Source: Dendrobates tinctorius (Eukaryota). From it: DNA of 64,000 bases. The DNA lies in the NCBI RefSeq assembly GCF_039654945.1, contig NW_027361804.1, forward strand, positions 2,976,001 to 3,040,000, written 5' to 3'. The translations under genes were made by a program, and so were the position numbers. A model generated the notes under the pieces. The model was not told where the DNA came from. It was given only the letters and a program-made list of their open reading frames with translations, and made no database searches. This document shows, one piece after another, positions 25,101 to 52,129 of this stretch (its first letter is position 1; every line of letters begins with the position of its first letter).

Positions 25101-25352
25101 AGGAAGAAAAAGCTGCGGATCCTTTTATATTCATGGTACAGACTGTAGTTCTGTGAGCATGCTGGGAGTTGTAGTGCTCCAGGGAGTGGAGACCATTGAT
25201 TCTGGAGGAGCAAAGATGATATGTGGGGGAGACAGAGGATGCGACTCAGAACTTAACCCTTTGTATCTTTTTTCCAGATTCCGCTACAGGTCACCGCAGT
25301 GTCCACCCTGAGGCCGAAGGATGGAGTGTATGTCAGAGTTGTAGCTCGCTAG
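10172..25352 (+). CDS. TBXAS1: Thromboxane-A synthase (cytochrome P450 CYP5A1), 13 coding exons, 526 aa
   Basis: Exons 10172-10254, 14326-14419, 14498-14550, 14696-14792, 14930-15046, 19635-19723, 19816-19967, 20893-21023, 21099-21398, 21491-21579, 24727-24864, 24935-25097, 25278-25352. All GT-AG, phases consistent, total 1581 nt. N-terminal anchor [48 protein letters not shown]-helix [14 protein letters not shown], ExxR (ESLR), PERF, heme motif [10 protein letters not shown]. Adjacent to PARP12 as in mammals. An acceptor at 10140 implies an upstream non-coding exon. Confidence 0.95.
11280..12450 (+). mobile_element. Decayed Penelope-like retroelement reverse-transcriptase remnant (TBXAS1 intron 1)
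   Basis: Frameshifted motifs [37 protein letters not shown]...KGQF resemble PLE RT motifs; boundaries approximate. Confidence 0.6.
12560..14105. repeat. Degenerate 45-48-bp minisatellite (AATACCGCCACATGGTATACTAATAATACCACCATACAGCACCTATGT)n
   Basis: Tandem repetition; the 483-aa ORF is its translation. Older decayed copies at about 10380-10800. Confidence 0.92.
15120..17400. repeat. Degenerate GGTTAG/TTAGGG-like hexamer tract, split by a solo LTR
   Basis: GGGTTAGAGTTATGGGTATGGTTAGG-type periodicity at 15120-15372 and 16818-17400. Confidence 0.75.
15373..16817. mobile_element. Solo LTR (1445 bp)
   Basis: TGTCATGAT...ATCATTACA inverted termini (TG..CA) flanked by a 5-bp target-site duplication GGTAT (15368-15372 / 16818-16822). 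Confidence 0.8.
17568..19505. repeat. 41-bp GC-rich minisatellite (GGGTGCGGGGGGCCGATGCCGGACTGGTCTCCTCTCGTCCT)n
   Basis: Direct tandem repetition in TBXAS1 intron 5. Confidence 0.96.
20040..20780. repeat. Degenerate AT-rich ~21-bp repeat (GCTCATTAATATTCAG core)
   Basis: Recurring core throughout TBXAS1 intron 7. Confidence 0.85.
21662..24399 (-). mobile_element. Defective Tc1/mariner transposon containing an internal minisatellite
   Basis: Imperfect TIRs AGTCGCGGCCAAAAGGTTTCAGAC (left) and GTCTCAAAAGTTTTGGCCACGACT (right). Minus-strand transposase remnants at about 23580-24100 ([43 protein letters not shown]). Confidence 0.8.
21770..23580. repeat. 40-41-bp minisatellite (ATTGTGAGTGATCCCCTCCATGGATGAGAAGCCCCCGCAC)n
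   Basis: Direct tandem repetition inside the Tc1 relic. Confidence 0.96.
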
Positions 25353-25443: not shown

Positions 25444-25595
25444 TGTTGACCCCCCCTAGTACCAATATGGCTTGCATGTTGAACCCCACGATAACCATAA
25501 ATTAACCTAACAAGATGCTGGGGTCCTCCTTACATTATCAGTGCCCAAATCCCTCCATATGAGCTCACAGTTACATGGTAGAGAATGTGTTAACC

Positions 25596-27220
25596 TGCAG
25601 TCACCACTAGGGGGAGCTCCCTGTATACAGATATACATAAGATCCTGTCTGCAGCCACCACTAGGGAGAGCTCCCTGTATACAGAGATACATGATAAGAT
25701 CCTGTCTCCAGTCACCACTAGGGGGAGCTCCCTGTATACAGAGATACATGATAAGATCCTGTCTGCAGCCACCACTAGGGGGAGCTCCCTGTATACAGAG
25801 ATACATGATAAGATCCTGTCTCCAGTCACCACTAGGGGGAGATCCCTGTATACAGAGATACATGATAAGATCCTGTCTGCAGCCACCACTAGGAGGTGCT
25901 CCCTGTATACAGAGATACATGATAAGATCCTGTCTGCAGTCACCACTAGGGGGAGCTCCCTGTATACAGAGATACATAAGATCCTGTCTCCAGTCACCAC
26001 TAGGGGGAGCTCCCTGTATACAGATACAGGATAAGATCCTGCCTGCATTCACCACTAGGGGGAGCTCCCTGTATACAGAGATACAGGATAAGAACCTGTC
26101 TGCAGTCACCACTAGGGGGAGCGCCCTGTATACAGAGATACGTGATAAGATCCTGTCTGCAGTTACCACTAGGGGGAGCTCCCTATATACAGAGATGCAT
26201 GATAAGATCCTGTCTGCAGCCACCACTAGGGGGAGCTCCCTGTATACAGAGATACATGATAAGATCCTGTCTGCAGCCACCACTAGGGGGAGCTCCCTGT
26301 ATACAGAGATACATGATAAGATCCTGTCTGCAGCCACCACTAGGGAGAGCTCCCTGTATTCAGAGATACATGATAAGATCCTGTCTGCAGACACCACTAG
26401 GGGGAGCTCCCTGTATTCAGAGATACATGATAAGATCCTGTCTGCAGACACCACTAGGGGGAGCTCCCTGTATACAGAGATACATGATAAGATCCTGTCT
26501 GCAGCCACCACTAGGGGGAGCTCCCTGTATTCAGAGATACATGATAAGATCCTGTCTGCAGCCACCACTAGGGAGAGCTCCCTGTATACAGAGATACATG
26601 ATAAGATCCTGTCTGCAGACACCACTAGGGGGAGCTCCCTGTATACAGAGATACATGATAAGATCCTGTCTGCAGCCACCACTAGGGGGAGCTCCCTGTA
26701 TTCAGAGATACATGATAAGATCCTGTCTGCAGCCACCACAAGGGGGAGCTCCCTGTATACAGAGATACATGATAAGATCCTGTCTGCAGACACCACTAGG
26801 GGGAGCTCCCTGTATACAGAGATACATGATAAGATCCTGTCTGCAGCCACCACTAGGGAGAGCTCCCTGTATTCAGAGATACATGATAAGATCCTGTCTG
26901 CAGACACCACTAGGGGGAGCTCCCTGTATACAGAGATACATGATAAGATCCTGTCTGCAGCCACCACTAGGGGGAGCTCCCTGTATTCAGAGATACATGA
27001 TAAGATCCTGTCTGCAGCCACCACAAGGGGGAGCTCCCTGTATACAGAGATACATGATAAGATCCTGTCTCCAGTCACCACTAGGGGGAGCTCCCTGTAT
27101 ACAGAGATACAGGATAAGATCCTGTCTGCAGTCACCACTAGGGGGAGCTCCCTATATACAGAGATACAGGATAAGATCCTGTCTGCAGTTACCACTAGGG
27201 GGAGCTCCCTGTATACAAAT
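25596..27220. repeat. 57-bp minisatellite with CTCF-like core, left array (CTGCAGCCACCACTAGGGGGAGCTCCCTGTATACAGAGATACATGATAAGATCCTGT)n
   Basis: Direct tandem repetition; same unit and orientation as 39615-44830. Confidence 0.97.
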
Positions 27221-29211
27221 ATAAGAAGTCTATTTTTGTTTCTTGTGAGATATCTGACCCCTGGTGTCAGTTCAGCATTACTGCAGCTTGTATGGTTGGG
27301 GATTTGTGTTCTGTAAAATATCGCAGATCTCTTCTTGCCGTCAGTGAAAGTGTATAGAGATTAGAGTCAGAAGCTGGAAATCTGTCAGGCCAATTTGACA
27401 AGTGAAGTTTTGTTGGTTCACATCTGGAGACATGAAGGGTCCGCACTCCAGACTGGGACATTGTTCCTGCACTGACACATTGTAGCAAACCTCCAGGTTC
27501 ACAGATTCTTGTCCGCAGTCACACAAGCCCTTGACTGGGAGAAGTGACCGGTGATTCATTTCTGGGTTAATGAGACTGCTGCCGCTCACTCACAGCAAGC
27601 AGAGATTTTGACACCCTAGACGATAGCGTCAGACACTGAACCAAGGTTATGCGGTGGCTCCCTTTGTTTACAGGACGCCGGCCCTTTAATTACCAGAATG
27701 GTGGTGGGTCTGCTCCTCGGGGGAGGGGCTTCAGTTTTTCACTATTTGCCACTGGTTTCACATAAATCTATTTTTTAAATAAATTCGCTGTTTGTTTTTA
27801 AATCTCGTCAGACGTCCGATAATCCGGCGAGGGCCGTCTGCAGATACAACGGCTCCGCCCCTTCATCCAGAAGATGATTTGTGGGGTCTGATGTTGGGGG
27901 TCCAGGCTTTGTGCGGCCGCTCACGTTCCGTCCCCCTCTGTCTGGATGGGGGCAGAGGCGTATCGAGGCTTCTGGCACCCGGGGCAAGAATTCGGTTCGG
28001 TGCCCCCCCAGCACACACGCGACTTGCACACTTAGTCCTGTACCCACGAGCCGCTCTCCGTAATGATCTCAGCGATCAGTGATAACCTGAGAGAAGCAGA
28101 AGAGAAGCTCGTTGTCACAGGACCATAAGTGTGAGAGTCGCATATGAGTGAAGTGTCCGTGTGATGACTACTGGAACCTGCAGAGCTGAATCCTGACATT
28201 GCAGCTTCTGAATTCTCACAACGAATGCACTGCACACTTTTAGGATTCTCCCTTGCCGATATACAGTCATGTCAGCACAAGTATGTGATTTATATACTTC
28301 TAGCCACATTCCGACTAGACGTGCCCGGCCTCGCTCCGTTCATTATCATTGAGTGAGGCCACACACGTCTAGTCAGCATGTGACCGTATGTATGTAAATT
28401 ACCGGCACGAGAGAATCCTGACAGTGTCCTGTGCGCACAGTGAGAATTCAGAAGTCTGCAGTCACATAGAATGACTGCAGACTCAGCACAGACCTGGAGA
28501 ACCCCTGTAATGTTCCTAACAAATAAAAACATGAGAATTAGTCAGTATCACAGATAACATTTACATCCAGGTACCTTATATATGACGTCGTCTCTGGAGT
28601 CGTTCTCCTTTTCTTCTTCTTGTCCAGACTCCATGATGAGTTTTCTCATCCACATCTCGTCTCTGTAGACTTCCATCTTCTCCGGTCTTCTGCAGCAAAT
28701 CTCCACACGATCCCCTTAAAGATAGAAGAGTCATTATAATGCTCCTGAATAAATAATTGCCCCTCACTATATCGTCTGCACAAAATATGACCCCACGCTG
28801 TCCCTCTTATGGTACATGCTCTTCACACTGAGCTCTCCTTTCCATTCCGGCCCCCTCTTCACACTGTCCTCTCACACTGTGTCCTCCCTATAGGGTCCAG
28901 TCTATACTGTTCCCTCTCATCACACTCCTCCTCCTTGGTATACTGTCACCTCCTGGCTGTACCCTTACACTGTCCCCCATGCTACTCCCACACTACTCAG
29001 TCTGTATTCTGTGCCCACCCACTTTTCTCCCCCCATACTGTCTCCTCACACTATTCCCCTCCCTCCTCATACTGTCCCCTCTAACATCCCACCTGTTCAC
29101 AATACTGTCTCCTCATTTATTTACCCCCTCACTCTCTATACGGTCTGCTCACATATTCCCCTGACTCCCCATACTGTGTCTGCACACATCCCATCACCCT
29201 CACTCCCCATA

Positions 29212-29783
29212 CTAACCCCAATTCCTACTCCAAATCCCCCCACACATTAAATAACCCCCAATCCCTACTCCAAATCCCCCCACATTAAATAACCCCAATC
29301 CCTACTCCAAATCCCCCCACACATTAAATAACCCCCAATCCCTACTCTAAACACCCCCACATTAAATAACCCCAATCCCTACTCCAAACACCCCCACATT
29401 AAATAACCCCAATCCCTACTCCAAATCCCCCCACATTAAATAACCCCCAATCCCTACTCCAAATCCCCCCACACATTAACCCCAATCCCTACTCCAAATC
29501 CCCCCCACATTAACCCCAATCCCTACTCCAAATCCCCCACACATTAAATAACCCCCAATCCCTACTCCAAACCCCCCCCACATTAACCCCAATCCCTACT
29601 CCAAATCCCCCCACATTAAATAACCCCAATCCTTACTCCAAATCCCCCCACATTAACCCCAATCCCTACTCTAAATCCCCCCATTAACCCCAATCCCTAC
29701 TCCAAATCCCCCCATTAAATAACCCCATTCCCTACTCCAAATCCCCCCCACATTAAATAACCCCCCATACCTACTCCAAATCC
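29212..29783. repeat. C-rich minisatellite (CCCCAATCCCTACTCCAAATCCCCCCACATTAAATAA)n
   Basis: Direct tandem repetition with variable C-runs. Confidence 0.92.
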
Positions 29784-33350: not shown

Positions 33351-33531
33351 ACATATGCAGGACTTCAGTAGTCCTAGTCCTCCCTGTACACTAGGGATCT
33401 GCGGCAGAAGCCTTATCAGCCTCTCACAGACACTTGTGTTCCCAGGACACTACCACCCTCATCCTCCACCACTGAGGAACGAGCGACTGATGGACCCACA
33501 GGAAACAGAGAACGAGGAGTAACTGCAGACC

Positions 33532-36500
33532 ATGGCGGAAGGTGAGAAGCGACGTCTCATCCATCGGGTCTGATGTACGTGATCGCACCGGGCATCTATA
33601 ATGTTTCATATCACCTCTCTAGTAATGCCATACACTGTCCACGACAGCCGTACTGTGCCCACCGGGCCAGATCCCGTCCACATACAGCCGTACCGTGCCC
33701 ACCGGGGTCAGATCCCGTCCACATACAGCCGTACTGTGCCCACCGGGCCAGATCCCGTCCACATACAGCCGTACTGTGCCCACCGGGGTCAGATCCCGTC
33801 CACATACAGCCGTACTGTGCCCACCGGGGTCAGATCCCGTCCGCATACAGCCGTACCGTGCCCACCGGGGTCAGATCCCGTCCGCATACAGCCGTACCGT
33901 GCCCACCGGGCCAGATCCCGTCCGCATACAGCCGTACCGTGCCCACCGGGGTCAGATCCCGTCCGCATACAGCCGTACCGTGCCCACCGGGGTCAGATCC
34001 CGTCCGCATACAGCCGTACCGTGCCCACCGGGGTCAGATCCCGTCCGCATACAGCCGTACCGTGCCCACCGGGGTCAGATCCCGTCCGCATACAGCCGTA
34101 CCGTGCCCACCGGGGTCAGATCCCGTCCGCATACAGCCGTACCGTGCCCACCGGGGTCAGATCCCGTCCGCATACAGCCGTACCGTGCCCACCGGGGTCA
34201 GATCCCGTCCGCATACAGCCGTACCGTGCCCACCGGGGTCAGATCCCGTCCGCATACAGCCGTACCGTGCCCACCGGGGTCAGATCCCGTCCGCATACAG
34301 CCGTACCGTGCCCACCGGGGTCAGATCCCGTCCGCATACAGCCGTACCGTGCCCACCGGGGTCAGGTCCCGTCCGCATACAGCCGTACCGTGCCCACCGG
34401 GGTCAGATCCCGTCCGCATACAGCCGTACCGTGCCCACCGGGGTCAGATCCCGTCCGCATACAGCCGTACCGTGCCCACCGGGGCCAGATCCCGTCCGCA
34501 TACAGCCGTACCGTGCCCACCGGGGCCAGATCCCGTCCGCATACAGCCGTACCGTGCCCACCGGGCCAGATCCCGTCCGCATACAGCCGTACCGTGCCCA
34601 CCGGGCCAGATCCCGTCCGCATACAGCCGTACCGTGCCCACCGGGCCAGATCCCGTCCGCATACAGCCGTACCGTGCCCACCGGGCCAGATCCCGTCCGC
34701 ATACAGCCGTACCGTGCCCACCGGGCCAGATCCCGTCCGCATACAGCCGTACCGTGCCCACCGGGCCAGATCCCGTCCGCATACAGCCGTACCGTGCCCA
34801 CCGGGCCAGATCCCGTCCGCATACAGCCGTACCGTGCCCACCGGGCCAGATCCCGTCCGCATACAGCCGTACCGTGCCCACCGGGCCAGATCCCGTCCGC
34901 ATACAGCCGTACCGTGCCCACCGGGCCAGATCCCGTCCGCATACAGCCGTACCGTACCCACCGGGCCAGATCCCGTCCGCATACAGCCGTACCGTACCCA
35001 CCGGGCCAGATCCCGTCCGCATACAGCCGTACCGTGCCCACCGGGGTCAGATCCCGTCCGCATACAGCCGTACCGTGCCCACCGGGGTCAGATCCCGTCC
35101 GCATACAGCCGTACTGTGCCCACCGGGGTCAGGTCCCGTCCGCATACAGCTGTACTGTGCCCACAGGGGTCAGATCCTGTCCACATACAGCCGTACTGTG
35201 CCCACCGGGGTCAGATCCCGTCCACATACAGCCGTACTGTGCCCACCGGGGTCAGATCCCGTCCACATACAGCCGTACCGTGCCCACCGGGGTCAGATCC
35301 CGTCCGCATACAGCCGTACCGTGCCCACCGGGGTCAGATCCCGTCCGCATACAGCCGTACCGTGCCCACCGGGGCCAGATCCCGTCCGCATACAGCCGTA
35401 CCGTGCCCACCGGGCCAGATCCCGTCCGCATACAGCCGTACCGTGCCCACCGGGCCAGATCCCGTCCGCATACAGCCGTACCGTGCCCACCGGGCCAGAT
35501 CCCGTCCGCATACAGCCGTACCGTGCCCACCGGGCCAGATCCCGTCCGCATACAGCCGTACCGTGCCCACCGGGCCAGATCCCGTCCGCATACAGCCGTA
35601 CCGTGCCCACCGGGCCAGATCCCGTCCGCATACAGCCGTACTGTGCCCACCGGGCCAGATCCCGTCCGCATACAGCCGTACTGTACCCACCGGGCCAGAT
35701 CCCGTCCGCATACAGCCGTACTGTGCCCACCGGGGTCAGATCCCGTCCGCATACAGCCGTACTGTGCCCACCGGGGTCAGATCCCGTCCGCATACAGCCG
35801 TACTGTGCCCACCGGGGTCAGGTCCCGTCCGCATACAGCCGTACTGTGCCCACAGGGGTCAGATCCTGTCCACATACAGCCGTACTGTGCCCACCGGGGT
35901 CAGATCCCGTCCACATACAGCCGTACTGTGCCCACCGGGGTCAGATCCCGTCCACATACAGCCGTACTGTGCCCACCGGGGTCAGATCCTGTCCACATAC
36001 AGCCGTACTGTGCCCACCGGGGTCAGATCCCGTCCACATACAGCCGTACTGTGCCCACCGGGGTCAGATCCCGTCCACATACAGCCGTACTGTGCCCACC
36101 GGGGTCAGATCCCGTCCACATACAGCCGTACCGTGCCCACCGGGGTCAGATCCCGTCCACATACAGCCGTACCGTGCCCACCGGGGTCAGATCCCGTCCA
36201 CATACAGCCGTACCGTGCCCACCGGGGTCAGATCCCGTCCACATACAGCCGTACCGTGCCCACCGGGGTCAGATCCCGTCCACAACAAATCAATGAATCA
36301 AGAACATAGTAAATATCTGAGCACATCTAATATAACCAGTGGTTCCTCCAAATTTACCAAACGCCACTTATTACATCCCGCGCACTCGGGACTATTCACA
36401 CGTTCATGACCGATGTACTTGGTAGATCGGTTTGGCTGTTATAACCTGCTACAGACACGATTCATAGTTTGACAACGGCTTCTGGCAGTGTTCCTGAGAG

Positions 36501-39044
36501 ATCTGAGCTTGGTCCTCACGGGCAAAGGCCTCCAGGTCACTAATATTCTGGAATTGTCTTGAGAATGATCCAAAAAGTGAAGAGAAGAGATAAAGAGACA
36601 AGGGGAGCAGATGGGACCGGCTGCACTGGACATGAAGCAAGGCAGGGGCTCGGTGATGTTTACAGTGAAGCACAGCGGGGGCTCGGTGGTGTCTGTGTGT
36701 TTACAGTACAGCACAGCGGGGGCTCGGTGGTGTCTGTGTGTTTACAGTGAAGCACAGCGGGGGCTCGGTGGTGTCTGTGTGTTTACAGTGCAGCACAGCG
36801 GGGGCTCGGTGGTGTCTGTGTGTTTACAGTGAAGCACAGCGGGGGCTCGGTGGTGTCTGTGTGTTTACAGTGAAGCACAGCGGGGGCTCGGTGGTGTTTA
36901 CAGTGAAGCACAGCGGGGGCTCGGTGATGTTTACAGTGAAGCACAGCGGGGGCTCGGTGATGTTTACAGTGAAGCACAGCGGGGGCTCGGTGGTGTCTAA
37001 AGTGCAGCATGGTGTTGGCCACTGCCCATCAAGAATGCCGCCAGAACCTGGAGTATGGCTATGCATCACATCTGAAGCAGGTTATACCAGCCAGAAAGGT
37101 CTACTAAGGACTAAAGATACTGGTCATGTAAAAGTAAATAATCTCCAGAGGGCAGAAGTCGGTAATAAGTGGCATTTTGTGGTGAATTTGGAGAACCTAC
37201 CCGTTGTGTCAGCCACGAGAAGTGGTGAGTTCTCCTTCAATGGAAGTCTTCAAACAGAGGCTGGACAGACATCTGACTGGAATGATTTAGCGAATCCTGC
37301 TTTGAGCAGGGGTTGGACCAGATGGCCCAGGAGGTCCCTTCCAACTCTACGATTCTATGATTCTATGATTTATATTGTTCTTGTTTCGTTGGTTTAGTGT
37401 AAACAGCAGAAAGCTTGTAAACTTCTACAGCAGTAGAAAGACCCTTCCTCTGTTCATGACGGAGGACATCAGTAAGGCCATCCCCTCAGTCTGCATTTCA
37501 TTGACTGGTCGTTCAATGTGTCATCCCCAACAGGACACGTCCTGGACCAGAGCATTAGTCGTCTCATCCAGACCATCTCTATGGTAGTGCCAGCCATGGA
37601 TGACCTGAGACAGATGAAGCTCCTGACGGACGAGCAGTATGACCTTGTGAAGAACAACGGCACCACCCAAGAGCAGATGAGGGAACTTTACCGACATGTC
37701 AAGAGCTGGGGCCACGCTGAAAAAACAACAGTCTACAAATGTCTGAAGAACAGCAATCCACTGGTGGTGACCAACATGGAGAAGAGTCTGCAGTCCATTC
37801 ATAACTGGTCAGATCATAAAGCTCCTATGGCCGATTCCAATCACTCAGTCCGTAGGAAGCAATATGTCCAATCAAGTGTGGACCATAAACTAGGAGCAGA
37901 GATTAAAGAGGAGGTCATAACTGGTTTGGAAGAATGGTTCTTTCATGAGAGAACTCCGAGAGAAGACTGCACTGCAGACAGAGGCCAGCACCTGCATTCA
38001 CAGGAGAAACACAATGTACACCAAGTCCTGGAGGAAATGACTTCCCAAAATGGTCATCTTCATCAAAGAGTTCAGAAACTTCAAGAAGAAATGGGGGCGG
38101 AAAAAGCCAAAGCCGAGGATATCAGCAGGAGAATGAACGTCCTGTTCATAAACAGCAGAAGACAGCTGGATCTCCTGGAGAAACGAATCCTGAGTGAGAT
38201 CTCCAGACAAGAAGAGCAGGCGTCCAAGTCAGTCTCTGATCTGATCCAGAAGCTGAAGGTCAAGAACGAGGAGCTGTGCAGAGATATAGGTCACATCAAG
38301 GAGCTGCGTACCTCCAACGGACCACTGATGGCACTGCAGGAGACGGAATATAACACTAATACAGAGCGAGGAACAGAAAGGAGCCTTTGTGCTGTACGTG
38401 ACCATGATATGGACGTGGGTCTGATCTCCGCAATGTTACACTCCGGTCTATCAGACATGATCACCGGTATAAAGAGAGGAATCTACGCTCAGGAAATTAC
38501 TGACCTACTACTGGACGTAAACACGGCAGAAAACCACGTCCATATATCCGAAGATCTGAAGACTGCAACCTGGTCACAAAGAGACCTGCAGCGTCCGGAA
38601 TCCGAGGAGCGGTTCGACCACTCGCAGGTGCTCAGCAGCACCGGGGTTGCTACAGACCAGGGTTACTGGGAGGTGGAGACCAGCGGCACGGGGGCCTGGA
38701 GGGTAGGCATGAGCTACGCTGGCGTGGCCAGGAAGGGTCGGCAGGGCTCTGTAGGGAACAATGAGCAGTCCTGGGCTCTGTGCCGGTGGATTAACGGCCT
38801 GGAATACGCAGTCATACATAACTGGAAAACCACCCCGATCCCCGACAAGATCTCCTCTCAGAGGTTTGGGATCTACCTGGATTATGGGGCCGGGCGTCTC
38901 TCCTTCTACGAGTTGGGTGACCCTGTCAAACACTTACATACTTTCCTCTCCACCTTCACGGCACCGCTACATGCCGCCATCTACGTATGGGACAGAGAGT
39001 GTGATAAGGGCTGTTGGGTGCGGATCCGGAGCTACGAGAAATGA
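33532..39044 (+). CDS. CARD - coiled-coil - PRY/SPRY (B30.2) protein, TRIM-derived, RING-less; 506 aa, two coding exons
   Basis: Kozak ACCATGG at 33532 encodes MAE-G with a phase-1 donor G|GTGAGA at 33542, matching the phase-1 acceptor CCCCAACAG|GA at 37534, followed by an uninterrupted non-repetitive ORF to TGA 39044. CARD 37534-37787 (HVLDQ..RLIQTIS..MDDL..KLLTDEQYDLV..TTQEQMRELY..SWG..K..VYKCLK..NP). Coiled coil about 38010-38340. B30.2 38496-39035 (LDVNTA, PESEERFD, YWEVE, WRVG, SWAL, GIYLDYGAGRLSFY, HLHTF). Confidence 0.88.
33645..36285. repeat. 40-41-bp CpG-rich minisatellite (CATACAGCCGTACCGTGCCCACCGGGGTCAGATCCCGTCCG)n
   Basis: Direct tandem repetition; the ~900-aa ORFs in all three + frames are translations of it. 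Confidence 0.97.
36647..36997. repeat. 41/31-bp minisatellite (GTTTACAGTGAAGCACAGCGGGGGCTCGGTGGTGTCTGTGT)n
   Basis: Direct tandem repetition. Confidence 0.93.
37212..37369 (+). mobile_element. CR1 LINE 3' fragment
   Basis: GGTCCCTTCCAACTCT followed by a (GATTCTAT)n tail, typical of CR1 3' ends; closely matches the reverse complement of 41806-41960. Confidence 0.9.
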
Positions 39045-39537
39045 GGGAAGATGTGAGCAGAGAACTTCCATCTAGAGCCGGTGATCCCCAGGTGTCCAGA
39101 GCGGTGGCCACTGGTATACGTATATACCCGGGCCCTGGAGACACCGGCGTCACTCCCTGAACTTCTGCCAGACCAGGGAGCACTGATGCAGATGGCAAAG
39201 TGGGCACCGGGCGGAGCAGACACTCGTCCTACAGTCACAGCACCCGCCGATACCTCTGCACACAGGAGCGAAAGGCACCCATATCTAGTGTCCGGCCAAC
39301 AGGGGGCGCATCACGGCCTGTAGAGAGGGGCAGAGCGGTGACTAAGAGGGAGAGAAACTCATTCACAAACATGTCCGGCTCAGTGCACACCTTTATGAGT
39401 GATACTCATCAGTAACACCCCTGAAGAGAGAAGCCGAAGAGCAGGTGGACCAAAGTAAGCACCAAGGGACAAACAAGGCCCAGGACAGCACAAAGGGCCA
39501 AGATCGAACGCTGACATAATGTTCTGTCTGATTGTAC

Positions 39538-39543
39538 ATTAAA
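39538..39543 (+). terminator. Candidate polyadenylation signal of the CARD-SPRY gene
   Basis: ATTAAA about 0.5 kb after the stop, just before the 57-bp array. Confidence 0.4.
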
Positions 39544-40412
39544 CACATCATACAAAGGTCACATCTGTGTCCTGACCGTAATCTACACAAGACCAGGGAA
39601 AGCGGCAAAAATCAGCCTGCAGCCACCACTAGGGGGAGCTCCCCGTATACAGAGATACATGATAAGATCCTGTCTGCAGCCACCACTAGGGGGAGCTCCC
39701 TGTATACAGAGATACATGATAAGATCCTGTCTGCAGCCACTAGGGGGAGCTCCCGGTATACAGAGATACATGATAAGATCCTGTCTGCAGTCACCACTAG
39801 AGGGAGATCCCTGTATACAGAGATACATGATAAGATCCTGCCTGCAGCCACCACTAGGGGGAGCTCCCTGTATACAGAGATACATGATAAGATCCTGTCT
39901 GCAGACACTAGGGGGAGCTCCTTGTATGCAGAGATATATGATAAGATCCTGTCTGCAGTCACCACTAGAGGGAGATTCCTGTATACAGAGATACATGATA
40001 AGATCCTGTCTGCAGACACTAGGGGGAGATCCCTGTATACAGAGATACATGATAAGATCCTGTCTGCAGTCACCACTAGAGGGAGATTCCTGTATACAGA
40101 GATACATGATAAGATCCTGTCTGCAGACACTAGGGGGAGATCCCTGTATACAGAGATACATGATAAGATCCTGCCTGCAGCCACCACTAGGGGGAGCTCC
40201 CTGTATAGAGATACATGATAAGATCCTGTCTGCAGACACTAGGGGGAGCTCCTTGTATGCAGAGATATATGATAAGATCCTGTTTGCAGCCACCACTAGA
40301 GGGAGCTCCCTGTATACAGAGATACATGATAAGATCCTGTCTGCAGTCACCACTAGAGGGAGATTCCTGTATACAGAGATACATGATAAGATTCTGTCTG
40401 CAGTCACCACTA

Positions 40413-40696
40413 AATAATAATAATAAATAATCTTTATTTTTATATAGCGCTAACATATTCCGCAGCGCTTTACAGTTTGCACACATTTTCATCACTGTCC
40501 TCGATGGGGCTCACAATCTAAATTCCCTATCAGTATGTCTTTGGAGTGTGGGAGGAAACCGGAGTACCAGGAGGAAACCCACGCAAACACGGGGAGAACA
40601 TACAAACTCCTTGCAGATGTTGTCCTTGGTGGGATTCGAACCCAGGACTCCAGCGCTGCAAGGCTGCAGTGCTATCCACTGAGCCACCGTGCTGCT
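40413..40696 (-). mobile_element. tRNA-derived V-SINE, full length
   Basis: On the - strand: A box TGGCTCAGTGG, B box GGTTCGAATCC, V-domain-like GGAGTTTGTATGTTCTCCCCGTGTTTGCGTGGGTTTCCTCC, L2-like 3' end and (TTA)n tail. 7-bp TSD ACCACTA (40406-40412 / 40697-40703). Confidence 0.88.
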
Positions 40697-41805
40697 ACCA
40701 CTAGAGGGAGCTCCCTGTATACAGAGATACATGATAAGATCCTGTCAGCAGTCACCACTAGAGGGAGCTCCTTGTATGCAGAGATACATGATAACATCCT
40801 GTCTGTAGCCACCACTAGGGGGAGCTCCCTGTATACAGAGATACATAAGATCCTGTCTGCAGCCACCACTAGGGGGAGCTCCCTGTATACAGAGATCTGC
40901 AGTCACCACTAGAGGGAGCTCCCTGTATACAAAGATACATGATAAGATCCTGTCTGCAGCCACCACTAGGGGGAGCTCCCTGTATACAGAGATACATGAT
41001 AAGATCCTGTCTGCAGCCACCACTAGGGGGAGCTCCCTGTATAGAGATCTGCAGTCACTAGAGGGAGCTCCCTGTATACAGAGATACATGATAAGATCCT
41101 GCCTGCAGTCACCACTAGGGGGAGCTTCCTGTATACAGATACATAAGGTCCTGTCTGCAGCCACCACTAGGAGGCGCTCCCTGTATACAGAGATACATGA
41201 TAAGATCCTGTTTGTAGCCACCACTAGGGGGAGCTCCCTGTATACAGAGATACATAAGATCCTGTCTGCAGTCACCACTAGGGGGAGCTTCCTGTATACA
41301 GAGATACATAAGATCCTGTCTGCAGTCACCACTAGGGGGAGCTCCCTGTATACAGAGATGCATAAGATCCTGTCTGCAGCCACCACTAGGGGAAGCTCCC
41401 TGTATACAGAGATGCATAAGATCCTGTCTGCAGCCACCACTAGGGGGAGCTCCCTGTATACAGAGATACATGATAAGATCTAGTCTGCAGCCACCACTAG
41501 GGGGAGCTCTCTGTACACAGAGATACATGATAAGATCCTGTCTCCAGTCACCACTAGGGGGAGCTCCCTGTATACAGAGATACATGATAAGATCCTGTCT
41601 GCAGCCACCACTGGGGAGCTCCCTGTATACAGAGATACATGATAAGATCCTGCCTGCAGCCACCACTAGAGGGAGCTCCCTGTATAGAGATACATGATAA
41701 GATCCTGTCTGCAGCCACCACTAGGGGGAGCTCCCTGTATACAGAGATACATGATAAGATCCTGTCTGCAGCCACCACTAGGGGGAACTCCCTGTATACA
41801 GAGAT

Positions 41806-42625
41806 AGAATCATAGAATCGCAGAGTTGGAAGGGACCTCCTGGGCCATCTGGTCCAACCCCCTGCTCAAAGCAGGATTCGCTAAATCATCTCAGTCAGAT
41901 GTCTGTCCAGCCTCTGTTTGAAGACTTCCATTGAAGGAGAACTCACCACTTCTCGTGGCAGCTTGTTCCACTCATTGATCACTCTGTCAAAAAGTTTTTT
42001 CTAATATCTAATCTGTGTCTCCTCCCATTCAGTTTCATCCCATTGCTTCTAGTCTTTCCTTGTGCAAATGAGAATAAAGTTGATCCTTCTACAATGTGAC
42101 AGCCCTTTAGATATTTGTAGACAGCTATTAAGTCTCCTCTCAGTCTTCTCTTTTGCAAACTAAACATTCCCAAATCCTGCAACCTTTCCTCATAAGACAG
42201 GGTTTGCAGACCGGTCACCATTCTGGTCGCTCTTTTCTGAACTTGCTCCAGTTTGTTGATGTCTTTTTTAAAATGTGGCGCCCAAAACTGGACACAATAT
42301 TCCAGATGAGGTCTGACCAAAGAGTAGAGGGAAATAATGACTTCACGTGATCTAGACTGTATGCTTCTATTAATACATCCTAGAATTGCATTTGCCTTTT
42401 TTGCTGCTGCATCACACTGTTGACTCATATTCAGTCTGTGATCTATTAGTATACCCAAGTCTTTTTCACATGTGCTGTCACTTAGCCCTATTCCTCCCAT
42501 TCTGTATATGCTTTTTTCATTTTTATTGCCCAGATGTAGTACTTTGCATTTTTCCCTGTTAAAAACCATTCTGTTAGTTGCTGCCCACTTCTCCAGTTTA
42601 TTTATATCTTTCTGAATCCTCTCTC
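41806..42625 (-). mobile_element. 5'-truncated CR1 LINE, copy 1 (ORF2 C-terminus)
   Basis: ORF 41979-42569 with FNREKCKVLHLG, EKDLG, QQCDAAAKKAN, LVRPHLEYCVQFWAP, LEQVQKRATRM, RRLRGDLI; CR1 tail; apparent AGATA duplication at the junctions. Confidence 0.95.
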
Positions 42626-43520
42626 AGATACATAAGATCCTGTCTGCAGCCACCACTAGGGGGAGCTCCCTGTATACAGAGATACATGATAAGATCCTGT
42701 CTGCAGCCACCACTAGGGGGAGCTTCCTGTATACAGAGATACATGATAAGATCCTGTCTGCAGCCACCACTAGGGGGAACTCCCTGTATACAGAGATACA
42801 TGATAAGATCCTGTCTGCAGCCACCACTAGGGGGAGCTCCCTGTATATAGAGATACGATAAGATCCTGTCTGCAGCCACCACTAGGGGGAGCTCCCTGTA
42901 TACAGAGATACATAAGATCCTGTCTGCAGCCACCACTAGGGGGAGCTCACTGCATACAGAGATACATGATAAGATCCTGTCTGCAGCCACCACTAGGGGG
43001 AGCTTCCTGTATACAGAGATACATAAGATCCTGTCTGCAGTCACCACTAGGGGGAGCTCCCTGTATACAGAGATGCATAAGATCCTGTCTGCAGCCACCA
43101 CTAGGGGAAGCTCCCTGTATACAGAGATGCATAAGATCCTGTCTGCAGCCACCACTAGGGGGAGCTCCCTGTATACAGAGATACATGATAAGATCTAGTC
43201 TGCAGCCACCACTAGGGGGAGCTCTCTGTACACAGAGATACATGATAAGATCCTGTCTCCAGTCACCACTAGGGGGAGCTCCCTGTATACAGAGATACAT
43301 GATAAGATCCTGTCTGCAGCCACCACTGGGGAGCTCCCTGTATACAGAGATACATGATAAGATCCTGCCTGCAGCCACCACTAGAGGGAGCTCCCTGTAT
43401 AGAGATACATGATAAGATCCTGTCTGCAGCCACCACTAGGGGGAGCTCCCTGTATACAGAGATACATGATAAGATCCTGTCTGCAGCCACCACTAGGGGG
43501 AACTCCCTGTATACAGAGAT

Positions 43521-44340
43521 AGAATCATAGAATCGCAGAGTTGGAAGGGACCTCCTGGGCCATCTGGTCCAACCCCCTGCTCAAAGCAGGATTCGCTAAA
43601 TCATCTCAGTCAGATGTCTGTCCAGCCTCTGTTTGAAGACTTCCATTGAAGGAGAACTCACCACTTCTCGTGGCAGCTTGTTCCACTCATTGATCACTCT
43701 GTCAAAAAGTTTTTTCTAATATCTAATCTGTGTCTCCTCCCATTCAGTTTCATCCCATTGCTTCTAGTCTTTCCTTGTGCAAATGAGAATAAAGTTGATC
43801 CTTCTACAATGTGACAGCCCTTTAGATATTTGTAGACAGCTATTAAGTCTCCTCTCAGTCTTCTCTTTTGCAAACTAAACATTCCCAAATCCTGCAACCT
43901 TTCCTCATAAGACAGGGTTTGCAGACCGGTCACCATTCTGGTCGCTCTTTTCTGAACTTGCTCCAGTTTGTTGATGTCTTTTTTAAAATGTGGCGCCCAA
44001 AACTGGACACAATATTCCAGATGAGGTCTGACCAAAGAGTAGAGGGAAATAATGACTTCACGTGATCTAGACTGTATGCTTCTATTAATACATCCTAGAA
44101 TTGCATTTGCCTTTTTTGCTGCTGCATCACACTGTTGACTCATATTCAGTCTGTGATCTATTAGTATACCCAAGTCTTTTTCACATGTGCTGTCACTTAG
44201 CCCTATTCCTCCCATTCTGTATATGCTTTTTTCATTTTTATTGCCCAGATGTAGTACTTTGCATTTTTCCCTGTTAAAAACCATTCTGTTAGTTGCTGCC
44301 CACTTCTCCAGTTTATTTATATCTTTCTGAATCCTCTCTC
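43521..44340 (-). mobile_element. 5'-truncated CR1 LINE, copy 2
   Basis: Identical 196-aa ORF and identical ends, offset 1715 bp from copy 1. Confidence 0.95.
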
Positions 44341-45220
44341 AGATACATAAGATCCTGTCTGCAGCCACCACTAGGGGGAGCTCCCTGTATACAGAGATAC
44401 ATGATAAGATCCTGTCTGCAGCCACCACTAGGGGGAGCTTCCTGTATACAGAGATACATGATAAGATCCTGTCTGCAGCCACCACTAGGGGGAACTCCCT
44501 GTATACAGAGATACATGATAAGATCCTGTCTGCAGCCACCACTAGGGGGAGCTCCCTGTATATAGAGATACGATAAGATCCTGTCTGCAGCCACCACTAG
44601 GGGGAGCTCCCTGTATACAGAGATACATGATAAGATCCTGTCTGCAGCCACCACTAGGGGGAGCTCACTGCATACAGAGATACATGATAAGATCCTGTCT
44701 GCAGCCACCACTAGGGGGAGCTCCCTGTATATAGAGTTACATGATAAGATCCTGTCTGCAGCCACCACTAGGGGGAGCTCCCTGTATACAGAGATACATA
44801 AGATCCTGTCTGCAGCCACCACTAGGGGGAGTACTTGTAGTAGAGTTCTACAGGCAGCTCCCCCTGGTGGAGGATCTGTATCGCTGCACTTTCCCAGGTT
44901 CAGGGGAAGCAGTTTTGGACCCTACAGCTGGATCCCGCTCCGGTCGGTGCAGTATAGGGCTTCGGGATGATGAGGACAGAGGTGGCTCTTGCAGACAGGA
45001 TGTTGTGCTTCCCCAGGACCTACAAGTGGCGCACTCGCTGACTCATCACATGGAGCTACTGTCTGGATTCCCTGATCTCCCCCACAGGGATCAGAGTATA
45101 TACCCTGGAGGTGCGCAAGGGCCAAGCACTATACTGCGAGGGGGGGGGGGGCAGGGGCCGGATGGCGAGTCCTTCTAGAGGAGAAACTGGAAGTCAATGA
45201 GTAAGATGTGGAAAATAGAT

Positions 45221-51700: not shown

Positions 51701-52010
51701 GCTCCAGATTATCGGACTCCTCTCACCTGCTGCAGCCGCCTAAGATGAAGAAGCGGCAGATGTGGAGATGGCCGCAGTTTCCAGGACATTCCTGGTTGCG
51801 GCTGGCGCAGAGTCTCAGAGAGCTGCTGTACACCGCCACCCGCCCTCCGTCCCGGCTCTGGATCACCAGACTCCGCCCCTCCTCCACCTCCAGGAGCCGC
51901 GACATCTGATCGGGGCTCAACTTGAGGGTCCGGCCCAAGCGGCCGAGCTTCATACTGCCCCCGCTGGAGCACAATGCCTGGCACAGCTTTAGGGAGAGGG
52001 GGTCTGCCAT
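45721..52010 (-). CDS. PARP12: Protein mono-ADP-ribosyltransferase PARP12 (CCCH zinc fingers, WWE, ART domain), 12 coding exons, 653 aa
   Basis: Exons 52010-51727, 51652-51517, 51100-50809, 50640-50554, 50479-50359, 50287-50125, 48514-48391, 48055-47959, 47692-47611, 46465-46335, 46268-46117, 46013-45721. GT-AG, phases consistent, total 1962 nt. Motifs LQNDPCLLPDVCSHYNRGEGPYGSC..KLHVC..GDCRFG..CKRSH, LPYRWQ, PPHFILTTDWLWYW, FHGTS, NFDWRICG, YGKGSYFARDAAYSH, PSIFVVFEKHQIYPEY. Syntenic with TBXAS1. Confidence 0.95.
46654..47560. repeat. 55/45-bp minisatellite, reverse complement of the 4132-5050 family
   Basis: (CCTCCAGTCACCTCCAGAGCTGCACTCACTATTCTGCTGTTACATCGTGTCTTAT)n with alternating 55+45 dimers. 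Confidence 0.94.
48638..49560. mobile_element. Non-autonomous TTAA-type (piggyBac-like) DNA element
   Basis: Starts TTAACCCCTT and ends AAAGGGTTA; internal palindromes; no ORF. Confidence 0.6.
49561..49835 (+). mobile_element. Penelope-like RT fragment
   Basis: Remnant motifs RGTAMGTACTPSFTNL, YIDDI, VEFLDI. Confidence 0.65.
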
Positions 52011-52129
52011 GGTGGGGTCCTGAAAGGTTACCAGGTGCCCGCACCAGAGACACTCACAAGGCACCCTCCTCCGACTGTCTGCCCCCGACCTGTACTATGG
52101 GGACTCCTGATAGGACTCCGGAGCCGCAG

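What the first reader, a model, noticed from the sequence alone, without database searches (positions are those of the whole stretch)
33532..39044. Chimeric CARD-coiled-coil-PRY/SPRY gene: a candidate pyrin-analogous innate sensor
Seen: an intact, non-repetitive 506-aa product (MAE|GHVLDQ...) once the 10-nt Kozak exon is spliced to 37534; the ORF track misses this and starts it at a GTG. Knowledge: the first ~85 aa align by eye to the ASC/NLRP1/CARD8-type CARD (ASC HFIDQHRAALI..LLDAL..VLTDEQYQAV..MRKLF..W..K..LQAL vs HVLDQSISRLI..AMDDL..LLTDEQYDLV..MRELY..W..K..YKCL). The remainder is the coiled-coil and B30.2 half of a TRIM. Pyrin uses PYD-Bbox-CC-B30.2; here a CARD stands where RING/B-box would be. 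Inference: ligand binding by SPRY plus coiled-coil dimerisation could cluster CARDs and recruit caspase-1 or ASC directly, or the protein could be a decoy inhibitor like the CARD-only proteins. I do not recall this architecture being characterised.
Basis: partly seen in the sequence, partly recalled or inferred. Interest (0 to 1): 0.92.

Follow-up and report, generated by a model that had tools for sequence, protein, structure and literature searches.

The report
Frog CARD–coiled-coil–SPRY gene
Poison frogs carry a real, expressed and conserved gene whose protein joins an inflammasome-type CARD signalling domain to the coiled coil and ligand-binding SPRY domain of a TRIM protein that has lost its ubiquitin-ligase RING, giving a pyrin-like layout that no paper in the searched library describes and whose function is still untested.

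Summary
The window is Dendrobates tinctorius. Exon 1 (ATGGCGGAAG|gt, 33532-33541) joined to 37534-39044 translates exactly to the deposited 506-aa 'uncharacterized protein'. Pfam finds CARD (2e-13), PRY and SPRY, with no RING or B-box.

RNA contigs from four runs start at the acceptor, skip the intron, and the same runs hold exon 1. The donor side of the junction was not read directly.

The CARD is closest to ASC and NLRP1 CARDs. The SPRY is closest to TRIM14 and TRIM25, not pyrin.

Orthologues occur in Dendrobatoidea, Leptodactylus and two myobatrachoid frogs. Mixophyes keeps CARD exon, intron, then a single-exon TRIM with an intact RING. Pseudophryne has lost the RING cysteines. Hyloids have deleted the RING and B-box region and the intron. 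So this is a CARD-tagged TRIM that converged on a pyrin-like layout; it is not a pyrin orthologue.

dN/dS is 0.08-0.33 for CARD and SPRY, indicating purifying selection.

Function (sensor that nucleates ASC or caspase-1, or regulator) is inferred only. TRIM coiled coils are antiparallel, so dimerisation alone would not cluster the CARDs.

No paper describes the architecture. Earlier notes from this scan on the same window agree. Verdict: new variant of a known kind, moderately interesting.

The parts
33447..33541 (+). Exon 1: 5'UTR plus the start codon ATG at 33532-33534 and 10 coding nucleotides (M-A-E-G[1 nt]), followed by the donor G|gtgaga. The 5' end is approximate.
   Evidence: Sequence shown. 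The X16 contig carries 95 letters upstream of the acceptor. Runs X19, X16, X18 and X15 hold 33445-33541. The homologous exon ATGGCTGCTGAAG|gtgaga is present in Mixophyes L001.
33490..33522 (+). Upstream ORF of 10 codons (ATG..TAA) inside the 5'UTR.
   Evidence: Read from the sequence. It was not tested further.
33542..37533 (+). Intron of 3992 nt. It is mostly a 41-bp tandem array (33644-36281) plus a second 41-bp array (36657-36998) and a dispersed repeat (about 37184-37435).
   Evidence: Tandem arrays from TRF. Zero RNA depth at 37436-37519, and very high multi-copy depth at 37184-37435.
37534..39044 (+). Coding part of exon 2: residues 4-506 and the stop codon (39042-39044). CARD through SPRY lie in this one exon.
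   Evidence: The contigs cover it continuously.
37536..37784 (+). CARD domain (residues 5-87 by Pfam). The model shows six helices: 6-17, 22-30, 36-43, 48-59, 64-77 and 79-96.
   Evidence: Pfam E 1.9e-13. PDB sequence matches to ASC and NLRP1 CARDs. AlphaFold2 pLDDT is 95-98 over the domain.
37800..37994 (+). Linker of 65 residues (93-157) in the place where the Mixophyes orthologue has 172 residues carrying the RING and B-box region. It has one Cys and no zinc-finger pattern, and is mostly disordered in the model.
   Evidence: BLASTP and tblastn leave this stretch unaligned. Alignment A1. pLDDT is below 50 at residues 97-121 and 143-154.
37986..38474 (+). TRIM-type coiled-coil region: one long helix (residues 155-263) followed by helices 267-280 and 298-317.
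   Evidence: AlphaFold2 model. Foldseek matches the TRIM25 coiled-coil plus PRYSPRY chains 6fln (E 1e-17). Pfam TRIM_CC hits in orthologues P0006 and P0007.
38505..38999 (+). PRY (38505-38645) and SPRY (38664-38999), together the B30.2 domain.
   Evidence: Pfam. PDB sequence match to TRIM14 PRYSPRY at 1.1e-23. Foldseek matches to TRIM25, TRIM14 and TRIM16 PRYSPRY with TM 0.82-0.85 by target.
39045..39560 (+). 3'UTR. A variant poly(A) signal ATTAAA lies at 39538-39543. The 3' end is approximate.
   Evidence: Contigs run to 39497-39513, and one runs to the end of the laid stretch. Sequence shown.

Best explanation
Shown:
- This is a genuine, spliced, expressed two-exon gene of Dendrobates tinctorius. 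It lies between the 3' ends of a TBXAS1-like P450 gene and PARP12.
- It encodes a 506-aa protein with an N-terminal inflammasome-type CARD, a 65-residue remnant linker, a TRIM-type coiled coil and a PRY/SPRY (B30.2) domain.
- It descends from a CARD-tagged TRIM. A symmetric phase 1-1 CARD exon of the ASC/NLRP1/caspase-1 clade was placed in front of a single-exon RING-Bbox-CC-PRY/SPRY TRIM, a state still seen in Mixophyes.
- The RING then became dispensable. Its zinc ligands are mutated in Pseudophryne. In hyloid frogs the RING and most of the B-box region were deleted together with the intron.
- CARD and SPRY have stayed under purifying selection.

Inferred (about 40-45% likely):
- The protein works like pyrin with a CARD in place of the PYD.
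- The SPRY binds a conserved ligand or guarded host factor.
- Many copies gathered on a multivalent target, or released from an autoinhibited state, bring the CARDs together. The antiparallel coiled-coil dimer alone would not do this.
- The clustered CARDs use their conserved type-b surface (D26, Y39, E37) to seed ASC-CARD or caspase-1-CARD filaments directly.
For: Gene reality:
- The spliced CDS equals the deposited protein.
- RNA contigs start at the acceptor and skip the intron, and the same runs hold exon 1.

Domains:
- Pfam finds CARD, PRY and SPRY.
- AlphaFold2 gives mean pLDDT 82, with CARD and SPRY at 90-98.
- The CARD is nearest ASC and NLRP1. It is 42-44% identical to frog ASC, caspase-1-like and CARD-NLR CARDs.
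- The SPRY is nearest TRIM14, TRIM25 and TRIM16.

Origin:
- Mixophyes L001 has a tiny exon 1, a CARD exon (ttacag|GT...CCAG|gtaacg) and a third exon that starts 2 nt before the TRIM's ATG and holds an intact C3HC4 RING.
- Pseudophryne lacks a RING hit and the RING cysteines.
- Leptodactylus and dendrobatids carry CARD through SPRY in one exon, with 65 residues where Mixophyes has 172.
- The seven CARDs form one clade that follows the species tree (SH-aLRT 97).

Constraint:
- NG86 dN/dS is 0.18-0.33 for CARD, 0.08-0.21 for PRY/SPRY and 0.32-0.50 for the coiled coil.
- Against a relative about 3.5% diverged, the listed changes are 18 synonymous and 22 non-synonymous (pN/pS 0.34), and the only indel in the CDS is 6 nt, in frame.

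Surface:
- The NLRP1/ASC filament-contact positions D1401/D134, Y1413, E1411/E144, T1421/T154 and R1427/R160 (PMC7794386) are kept as D26, Y39, E37, T47 and R53.

Context:
- PARP12 is also the neighbour in Phyllobates and in this window.
Against: - No functional data exist.
- The basic type-Ia residue (ASC R119, NLRP1 R1386) is I, L or M in all seven orthologues, although frog ASC and other frog CARDs keep R. The ASC E130 position is V, M or K. The canonical type I contact is therefore altered, and binding to ASC or caspase-1 may be weak or different.
- Without a B-box there is no known TRIM higher-order assembly module.
- TRIM coiled coils are antiparallel (established knowledge), which separates the two CARDs of a dimer.
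- The strongly conserved SPRY (dN/dS about 0.1-0.2) does not look like a pathogen arms-race sensor.
- The gene is missing from the annotated proteins of many other hyloids (Bufo, Engystomops, Eleutherodactylus), so it is dispensable in those lineages.
- The donor side of the splice junction was not read directly.
Confidence: 0.5

Rival explanations
1. Negative regulator. The CARD binds or caps ASC or caspase-1 CARD filaments without nucleating them, as CARD-only proteins (INCA/CARD17, ICEBERG, CARD16) do. Alternatively the coiled coil and SPRY deliver CARD-bound inflammasome parts to autophagy, as has been described for RING-independent roles of pyrin/TRIM20.
For: The type-Ia arginine (ASC R119 equivalent) is replaced by I, L or M in all orthologues, while part of the type-b surface is kept. 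That is the pattern expected of a CARD that can dock on a filament with one face but not extend it. The RING is lost, so the protein is not an E3 ligase. The SPRY is strongly conserved, which fits a host partner rather than a variable pathogen ligand.
Against: Known capping proteins are CARD-only and small. Keeping a 400-residue coiled coil and SPRY under purifying selection for the whole history of the family argues that ligand recognition matters. No data were obtained on autophagy motifs. The inference from two residues is weak.
Confidence: 0.22
2. A CARD-tagged TRIM adaptor working outside inflammasomes. The SPRY and coiled coil act as a scaffold, as in RING-less TRIM14 in antiviral signalling. 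The CARD recruits the protein to some other CARD platform, such as frog CARD-NLRs, or simply drives self-assembly.
For: The SPRY is nearest TRIM14 (1.1e-23), and several orthologues are auto-named 'TRIM14-like'. Frogs carry many other proteins with this CARD type, including CARD-FISNA-NACHT NLRs and CARDxN-RING-Bbox-CC proteins that could be partners. The gene sits beside PARP12, which is known from the literature as an interferon-stimulated antiviral gene.
Against: The CARD belongs by sequence to the ASC/NLRP1/caspase-1 clade and not to the MAVS/RIG-I or BCL10/CARD9 clades. Neighbourhood with PARP12 is not evidence of shared function. Nothing was tested.
Confidence: 0.2
3. Not a functional gene: a chance ORF, a decaying chimeric pseudogene or an annotation artefact.
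For: The gene lies in an extremely repeat-rich window. It is absent from the annotated proteins of many frogs. The Leptodactylus model has an implausible repeat-derived N-terminus.
Against: The ORF is intact at about 500 codons in seven species of two superfamilies. dN/dS is well below 1 in every domain. Spliced transcripts occur in several runs of two species. Both folded domains are predicted with confidence.
Confidence: 0.03

Closest known systems
Pyrin / TRIM20 (MEFV): PYD - B-box - coiled coil - B30.2
   Same: Both have a death-fold signalling domain at the N-terminus in the place of the TRIM RING, followed by a TRIM coiled coil and a C-terminal B30.2. Both are RING-less TRIM derivatives. 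The protein-language-model search puts pyrin-type clusters among the nearest: a PYD+PRY+SPRY cluster at rank 1 and MEFV at rank 6.
   Different: This protein has a CARD, not a PYD, and no B-box. Its B30.2 is closer to TRIM14, TRIM25 and TRIM16 than to pyrin (1e-23 against 1.6e-14). It arose separately, from a RING-bearing single-exon frog TRIM. It lies at the TBXAS1-PARP12 junction. Pyrin's 14-3-3/RhoA guard logic was not examined. This is convergence, not orthology.
ASC (PYCARD), NLRP1 and CARD8 C-terminal CARDs, and the caspase-1 CARD
   Same: The CARD falls in this sequence clade. The best solved matches are zebrafish and human ASC and NLRP1. It is 42-44% identical to frog ASC, caspase-1-like and CARD-NLR CARDs. 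Several filament-contact residues are kept.
   Different: The CARD is N-terminal and attached to a coiled coil and SPRY. There is no PYD, FIIND/UPA or protease domain. The type-Ia arginine (ASC R119, NLRP1 R1386) is hydrophobic in this family.
TRIM14 and the frog 'TRIM25-like / TRIM39-like / TRIM11-like' single-exon class-IV TRIM expansions
   Same: The coiled coil and PRY/SPRY are 42-49% identical to hundreds of frog TRIMs. TRIM14 is also RING-less, and its PRYSPRY is the nearest solved structure. The Mixophyes orthologue is a full RING-bearing TRIM in one exon.
   Different: Those proteins have no CARD. Here the RING and B-box are gone.
Frog CARDxN-RING-Bbox-coiled-coil proteins (Bufo bufo LOC121007980 P0172, Hyperolius P0155/P0200, Rana P0235, transcript P0269)
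   Same: They have one to four CARDs of the same type in front of a TRIM RING. They are collinear with the Mixophyes orthologue from the CARD through the coiled coil at 31-33% identity.
   Different: They keep the RING and B-boxes and end after the coiled coil without a PRY/SPRY. The ORF of transcript L003 stops there. Their CARDs do not group with the CARD-CC-SPRY clade in the CARD tree, although the tree is poorly resolved.
Atlas cluster 'zinc-binding protein A33-like', about 497 aa, with PYD + PRY + SPRY (76 chordate members)
   Same: It has the same length and the same plan: death-fold domain, no B-box hit, PRY/SPRY. It is the top feature-space neighbour, with score 0.90 and 174 shared features.
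   Different: It has a PYD instead of a CARD. The relationship was not tested by alignment, and the score is at the level the tool calls a lead only.

Membership tests
CARD (death-fold), ASC/NLRP1/caspase-1 subgroup | Sequence match to the CARD profile above the curated threshold | tested here: met
   PF00619 scores 50.7 bits against a cut-off of 23.9, E 1.9e-13, covering profile positions 2-84 of 85.
CARD (death-fold), ASC/NLRP1/caspase-1 subgroup | Six-helix bundle fold | tested here: met
   The AlphaFold2 model has six helices within residues 6-96 at pLDDT 92-98. No separate fold search of the CARD alone was run.
CARD (death-fold), ASC/NLRP1/caspase-1 subgroup | Nearest relatives are inflammasome CARDs rather than MAVS/RIG-I, BCL10/CARD9 or apoptosome CARDs | tested here: met
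   PDB phmmer finds ASC and NLRP1 at 2e-8 to 5e-6, cIAP1 at 9e-4 and CARD8 at 0.07. The exhaustive HMMER hits that were named are frog ASC, caspase-1-A-like, NLRP1a-like and CARD-NLRs.
CARD (death-fold), ASC/NLRP1/caspase-1 subgroup | Charged type I contact pair used in ASC/NLRP1 filaments (ASC R119 and R160 with E130 and D134; NLRP1 R1386 and R1427 with E1397 and D1401; PMC7794386) | tested here: inconclusive
   R160/R1427 is kept as R53 and D134/D1401 as D26. R119/R1386 is I11, and is I, L or M in all orthologues. E130/E1397 is V22. Frog ASC itself varies at the E130 position.
CARD (death-fold), ASC/NLRP1/caspase-1 subgroup | Homotypic binding to, or nucleation of, ASC or caspase-1 | not testable with these tools
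   This needs a complex prediction or biochemistry.
TRIM (RBCC) family, class IV | N-terminal RING finger | tested here: not met
   There is no RING hit in the D. tinctorius protein, and the 65-residue linker has a single Cys. The Mixophyes orthologue has an intact C3HC4 RING.
TRIM (RBCC) family, class IV | B-box zinc finger(s) | tested here: not met
   No PF00643 hit in P0001, nor in P0006 or P0007. Bufo P0172 aligns a true B-box 2 against a Cys-less stretch of P0006.
TRIM (RBCC) family, class IV | Long TRIM-type coiled coil followed by a helical linker | tested here: met
   The model has a 109-residue helix (155-263) plus helices 267-280 and 298-317. Foldseek aligns 371-375 columns to the TRIM25 CC-PRYSPRY chains. 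PF25600 TRIM_CC hits orthologue P0006 at 1e-7 but does not hit P0001 itself. The antiparallel dimer was not tested.
TRIM (RBCC) family, class IV | C-terminal PRY/SPRY (B30.2) | tested here: met
   Pfam PRY at 2.3e-8 and SPRY at 1.6e-14. TM 0.82-0.88 by target to TRIM PRYSPRY structures.
Pyrin / TRIM20 orthologue | N-terminal PYD | tested here: not met
   Pfam finds CARD, not PYRIN.
Pyrin / TRIM20 orthologue | B30.2 most similar to pyrin's, with descent from the MEFV lineage | tested here: not met
   Pyrin B30.2 scores E 1.6e-14, behind TRIM14, TRIM21, MID1, TRIM16 and butyrophilins. The ancestral form carries a RING. The locus is TBXAS1-PARP12.
Pyrin / TRIM20 orthologue | Regulation by phosphorylation-dependent 14-3-3 binding downstream of RhoA | not tested
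   No motif analysis was attempted, and the linker is not alignable to pyrin.
NLRP1 / CARD8-type sensors | FIIND (ZU5-UPA) autoproteolytic domain before a C-terminal CARD | tested here: not met
   There is no FIIND or UPA hit, and the CARD is N-terminal.
CARD-only regulators (INCA, ICEBERG, CARD16) | Small protein consisting of a CARD alone | tested here: not met
   The protein is 506 aa with a coiled coil and SPRY. A working resemblance (capping) is not excluded.

The most novel reading that the evidence does not exclude
Neobatrachian frogs evolved an NLR-independent and possibly ASC-independent inflammasome sensor. A B30.2 domain would read a conserved ligand or guarded host factor and seed caspase-1 directly through an N-terminal CARD. 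The family would also record, step by step, how an E3-ligase TRIM turns into a pyrin-like signalling sensor: CARD exon gained, then RING inactivated in one lineage and deleted in another. It would be part of a wider frog habit of shuffling one symmetric CARD exon into sensors (CARD-NLRs, CARDxN-TRIMs, CARD-lysozyme g).
Probability: 0.3. Interest if true: 0.8.

Novelty: new variant of a known kind. Interest (0 to 1): 0.6.

Why it matters
Pyrin is the only characterised TRIM-derived inflammasome sensor, and how it acquired its death-fold domain and lost its RING is not documented by intermediates. This frog family offers living intermediates: CARD plus an intact RING TRIM in Mixophyes, a dead RING in Pseudophryne, and a deleted RING and B-box in hyloids.

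If the CARD does engage ASC or caspase-1, the family would be an independent second invention of the 'death-fold + coiled coil + B30.2' sensor plan. It would also be a natural test of whether the B-box and RING are needed for such signalling.

It also adds to the little-known innate immune repertoire of amphibians, a group under heavy pressure from chytrid fungus and ranaviruses. The claim rests on sequence analysis only, so its weight depends on simple follow-up experiments.

Tried and rejected
- **Word-index search with the CARD region alone.** It returned only five orthologues. It is too insensitive to survey architectures, so it gives no evidence on novelty.
- **Scan of the other 147 exhaustive CARD hits.** I searched them with an HMM of this family's PRY/SPRY and found none. 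A RING regex found 12 CARD+RING proteins. These are not the same architecture, because the transcript ORF ends before any SPRY.
- **Read laying.** The first attempt was unanswered because the machine was busy. I did not lay reads across the whole 33.5-39 kb span because the intron is a 2.6-kb tandem array that the tool says it turns away. As a result the junction was shown from the acceptor side plus the presence of exon 1, not as a printed joint.
- **Synteny in Mixophyes and Leptodactylus.** tblastn of this window's PARP12 and P450 exons against the 10-kb flanks of L001 and L002 found nothing. This is uninformative at that flank size.
- **DNA of the Ranitomeya, Phyllobates and Bufo loci.** It could not be fetched because the files were too large. 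No site-wise selection test was possible.
- **CARD tree.** It has 90 columns for 142 rows. Only the orthogroup clade and its sister P0168 are supported, and the donor gene of the CARD exon cannot be named.
- **Pyrin orthology.** Considered and rejected for the reasons given in the membership test.
- **Retrocopy origin of the single coding exon.** Considered and rejected. The parental TRIM is already single-exon in Mixophyes, and the fusion of CARD and TRIM exons in hyloids is better explained by a genomic deletion that also removed the RING.

Full report
**What is in the sequence**

The window comes from Dendrobates tinctorius. A translated search of 37533-39041 returns a deposited 506-aa 'uncharacterized protein' of that species at 100% identity.

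The mechanical ORF list shows one long non-repetitive ORF, 37518-39044 (+), starting at a GTG. Nearly every other long ORF in the window lies inside tandem arrays.

Joining the two pieces gives a CDS whose translation equals the deposited protein residue for residue.

**Transcript evidence**

Fourteen runs marked 'RNA?' of a close relative hold part of exon 2, and six runs of unrecorded kind from the window's own species hold most of it.

I laid the contigs of four runs on 37100-39600. In every run a long contig begins to fit at 37532, which is the acceptor plus two letters (AG) that are identical in exon 1 and the intron end. Each contig then runs through the whole CDS into the 3'UTR. Each also carries 31 to 420 further letters upstream that do not lie on the intron. 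Depth is zero at 37436-37519 in all four runs.

Two runs match the window without a single difference. The same species' small runs also hold 33445-33541, the proposed exon 1 (shares 0.67-1.00). That matches the 95 extra letters on the best contig.

The transcript is therefore spliced at 37533/37534, and exon 1 is transcribed. The joint itself was not printed, so the donor is inferred from three things:
- the exact match to the deposited protein;
- the GT donor;
- the homologous exon ATGGCTGCTGAAG|gtgaga in Mixophyes.

I did not lay reads over the full span because the intron is a 2.6-kb 41-bp array.

**Domains**

Pfam finds CARD (E 1.9e-13), PRY (2.3e-8) and SPRY (1.6e-14), and no RING or B-box.

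The AlphaFold2 model, built on a 72-row alignment, has mean pLDDT 82. It shows:
- a six-helix bundle at residues 6-96 (pLDDT 92-98);
- a largely disordered linker;
- a 109-residue helix (155-263) followed by two shorter helices, as in TRIM coiled-coil regions;
- a beta-sandwich at 339-503 (pLDDT about 95).

Foldseek against the PDB is led by TRIM25, TRIM14, TRIM16, TRIM7 and TRIM21 PRYSPRY domains and by the TRIM25 coiled-coil-PRYSPRY chains.

By sequence, the CARD's nearest solved relatives are zebrafish ASC, NLRP1 and human ASC. The SPRY's nearest is TRIM14 (1.1e-23), with pyrin far behind at 1.6e-14.

An exhaustive HMMER search with residues 1-100 gave 358 hits. Those that could be named are frog ASC, caspase-1-A-like, NLRP1a-like and CARD-FISNA-NACHT NLRs, at 42-49% identity.

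**Relatives and origin**

Proteins with the same CARD...PRY/SPRY content occur in these frogs:

| Species | Identity to the window's protein |
|---|---|
| Ranitomeya | 89% |
| Phyllobates | 83% |
| Anomaloglossus | 77% |
| Leptodactylus fuscus | 57% |
| Pseudophryne corroboree | 56% over the part aligned |
| Mixophyes fleayi | 56% over the part aligned |

These species span Hyloidea and Myobatrachoidea. Their CARDs form one clade that mirrors the species tree (SH-aLRT 97).

The Mixophyes locus preserves what looks like the founding structure:
- a tiny first exon;
- a CARD exon in phase 1 at both ends;
- an 845-bp intron;
- a third exon whose acceptor lies 2 nt before the start codon of a complete single-exon TRIM, with an intact C3HC4 RING, a B-box-like stretch, TRIM_CC, PRY and SPRY.

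Pseudophryne has the same length, but the RING cysteines are replaced and Pfam finds no RING.

In Leptodactylus and the dendrobatoids, CARD through SPRY lie in one exon. Only 65 unalignable residues stand where Mixophyes has 172. A deletion therefore removed the intron, the RING and most of the B-box region.

So the CARD was added to a RING-bearing TRIM, and the RING was then lost twice in different ways. The end state resembles pyrin by convergence.

**Constraint**

Nei-Gojobori dN/dS values between D. tinctorius, Leptodactylus and Mixophyes are as follows:

| Region | dN/dS |
|---|---|
| CARD | 0.18-0.33 |
| PRY/SPRY | 0.08-0.21 |
| Coiled coil | 0.32-0.50 |
| Linker | about 0.4-0.6 |

Synonymous sites are near saturation for the Mixophyes pairs.

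Against the close relative seen in the RNA contigs, the 40 listed substitutions are 18 synonymous and 22 non-synonymous, over 327 and 1179 sites (pN/pS 0.34). The only indel within the CDS is 6 nt, in frame. The gene is under purifying selection, and the SPRY shows no sign of an arms race at this coarse level.

**Mechanism**

What is shown is the anatomy. The rest is inference.

An ASC/NLRP1-type CARD on a ligand-binding B30.2 suggests recruitment of ASC or caspase-1. The contact lists for NLRP1 and ASC filaments come from PMC7794386. Mapping them onto the frog CARD gives the following:
- Kept: D26, Y39, E37, T47 and R53.
- Changed: the type-Ia arginine (ASC R119, NLRP1 R1386) is I, L or M in all seven orthologues, whereas frog ASC and several other frog CARDs keep R.
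- Changed: the ASC E130 position is V, M or K.

In that paper upstream sensors use their type-b face to engage the type-a face of the downstream partner. A weakened type-a face with a partly kept type-b face fits a nucleator that does not self-polymerise readily. It fits a capping inhibitor equally well.

TRIM coiled coils are antiparallel dimers (established from TRIM5, TRIM25 and TRIM20 structures). Clustering would require many dimers on a multivalent target, or CARD-driven assembly, and there is no B-box to help.

My estimates are:
- pyrin-like activating sensor, about 0.4-0.45;
- negative regulator, about 0.2;
- CARD-tagged adaptor in another pathway, about 0.2;
- non-functional, about 0.03.

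**Context**

- On the + strand at 14.6-25.1 kb lie cytochrome P450 exons, including the haem-binding exon (Pfam p450, 1.5e-20).
- On the - strand at 45.7-52.1 kb lie PARP12 exons (PARP catalytic, WWE_4, zf-CCCH_PARP12).
- The Phyllobates orthologue is likewise followed by PARP12 on the opposite strand.
- It is bracketed by arrays of one 57-bp repeat.

**Known or new**

Four full-text searches found no paper on a CARD-coiled-coil-B30.2 or CARD-TRIM protein. The proteins are in public annotation only as 'uncharacterized' or 'TRIM14/TRIM39-like'.

Related but different frog proteins carry one to four such CARDs before a RING-Bbox-coiled coil and stop there.

A protein-language-model search places a 76-member chordate cluster with PYD+PRY+SPRY of the same length as the nearest neighbour. 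This is a lead that death-fold + B30.2 proteins without a B-box exist with a PYD as well.

I class the finding as a new variant of a known kind: a TRIM- or pyrin-like sensor architecture. It is real and conserved, with an informative evolutionary series and untested function. Two earlier notes on this same window (fusion scar; TBXAS1/PARP12 block) agree with what I found.

Noticed in passing
window 14592-25145 (+) and 45724-52094 (-): The flanking genes are cytochrome P450 (TBXAS1-like) exons upstream and PARP12 exons (PARP catalytic, WWE, PARP12-type CCCH fingers) downstream on the opposite strand. The CARD-SPRY gene lies between their 3' ends. Phyllobates shows the same PARP12 neighbour.
   Followed up: partly
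window 25595-27217 and 39617-44831: Arrays of the same 57-bp unit (CTGCAGCCACCACTAGGGGGAGCTCCCTGTATACAGAGATACATGATAAGATCCTGT) lie on both sides of the gene block, in the same orientation.
   Followed up: no
window 33490-33522: A 10-codon upstream ORF (ATG..TAA) lies inside the transcribed 5'UTR and ends 9 nt before the main start codon.
   Followed up: no
window 37184-37435 (intron) and 38108-38275 (CDS): In all four runs the intronic stretch has summed contig word depth of 10^4-10^5, from many short contigs with mismatches, which points to a dispersed, transcribed repeat. Run X16 alone also spikes inside the CDS at 38108-38275. The second spike is unexplained.
   Followed up: no
P0168 (Mixophyes fleayi, 'lysozyme g-like', 283 aa): A CARD at residues 1-92 is fused to a g-type lysozyme body. 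Its CARD is the sister of the CARD-TRIM CARDs (SH-aLRT 94) and ends with the same ..RRPQP exon end. This suggests copies of one symmetric CARD exon were inserted into different genes.
   Followed up: partly
P0178 (Gastrophryne), P0256 (Pyxicephalus); P0121 (Mantella), P0122, P0125 (Lithobates), P0134 (Leptodactylus): Frogs have NLRP3/NLRP12-like NLRs with an N-terminal CARD (CARD-FISNA-NACHT) instead of a PYD. They also have proteins with 4-12 tandem CARDs of this type. Use of a CARD where mammals use a PYD may be a general frog trait.
   Followed up: partly
P0172 (Bufo bufo), P0155/P0200 (Hyperolius), P0235 (Rana temporaria), L003/P0269 (transcript contig of an unnamed run): These are CARDxN-RING-Bbox-coiled-coil proteins without a SPRY. 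They are collinear with the Mixophyes orthologue at 31-33% identity. In L003 the ORF (61-2406) ends after the coiled coil, with about 900 nt of 3'UTR.
   Followed up: partly
P0240 (Heteronotia binoei, gecko) and P0198: These gene models join two or three CARDs of this type to a p53 DNA-binding domain. Whether they are real fusions or merged models was not checked.
   Followed up: no
P0009 (Aquarana catesbeiana) and P0010 (Rana temporaria): These 600-640-aa proteins are made of three tandem PRY/SPRY units with no CARD, RING or coiled coil. Each unit is 49-52% identical to this gene's SPRY.
   Followed up: no
P0011 (Anomaloglossus baeobatrachus, 314 aa): This is a CARD-less paralogue (63% identity) on the same chromosome-scale contig as the orthologue P0004. 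It starts at the MADSNHS motif that lies inside the linker of the CARD-bearing proteins.
   Followed up: no
L002 8500-10650 / P0005 residues 1-342: The N-terminal 342 residues of the Leptodactylus model are translated tandem repeat (MAVV.GTGDR units) plus unrelated exons. The conserved part is the single exon 27970-29406. This is probably a mis-annotated 5' end.
   Followed up: partly
Atlas cluster 'zinc-binding protein A33-like family protein': This is a 76-member chordate cluster of about 497 aa with PYD, PRY and SPRY in nearly all members. It is a PYD counterpart of the architecture studied here and is worth comparing.
   Followed up: no
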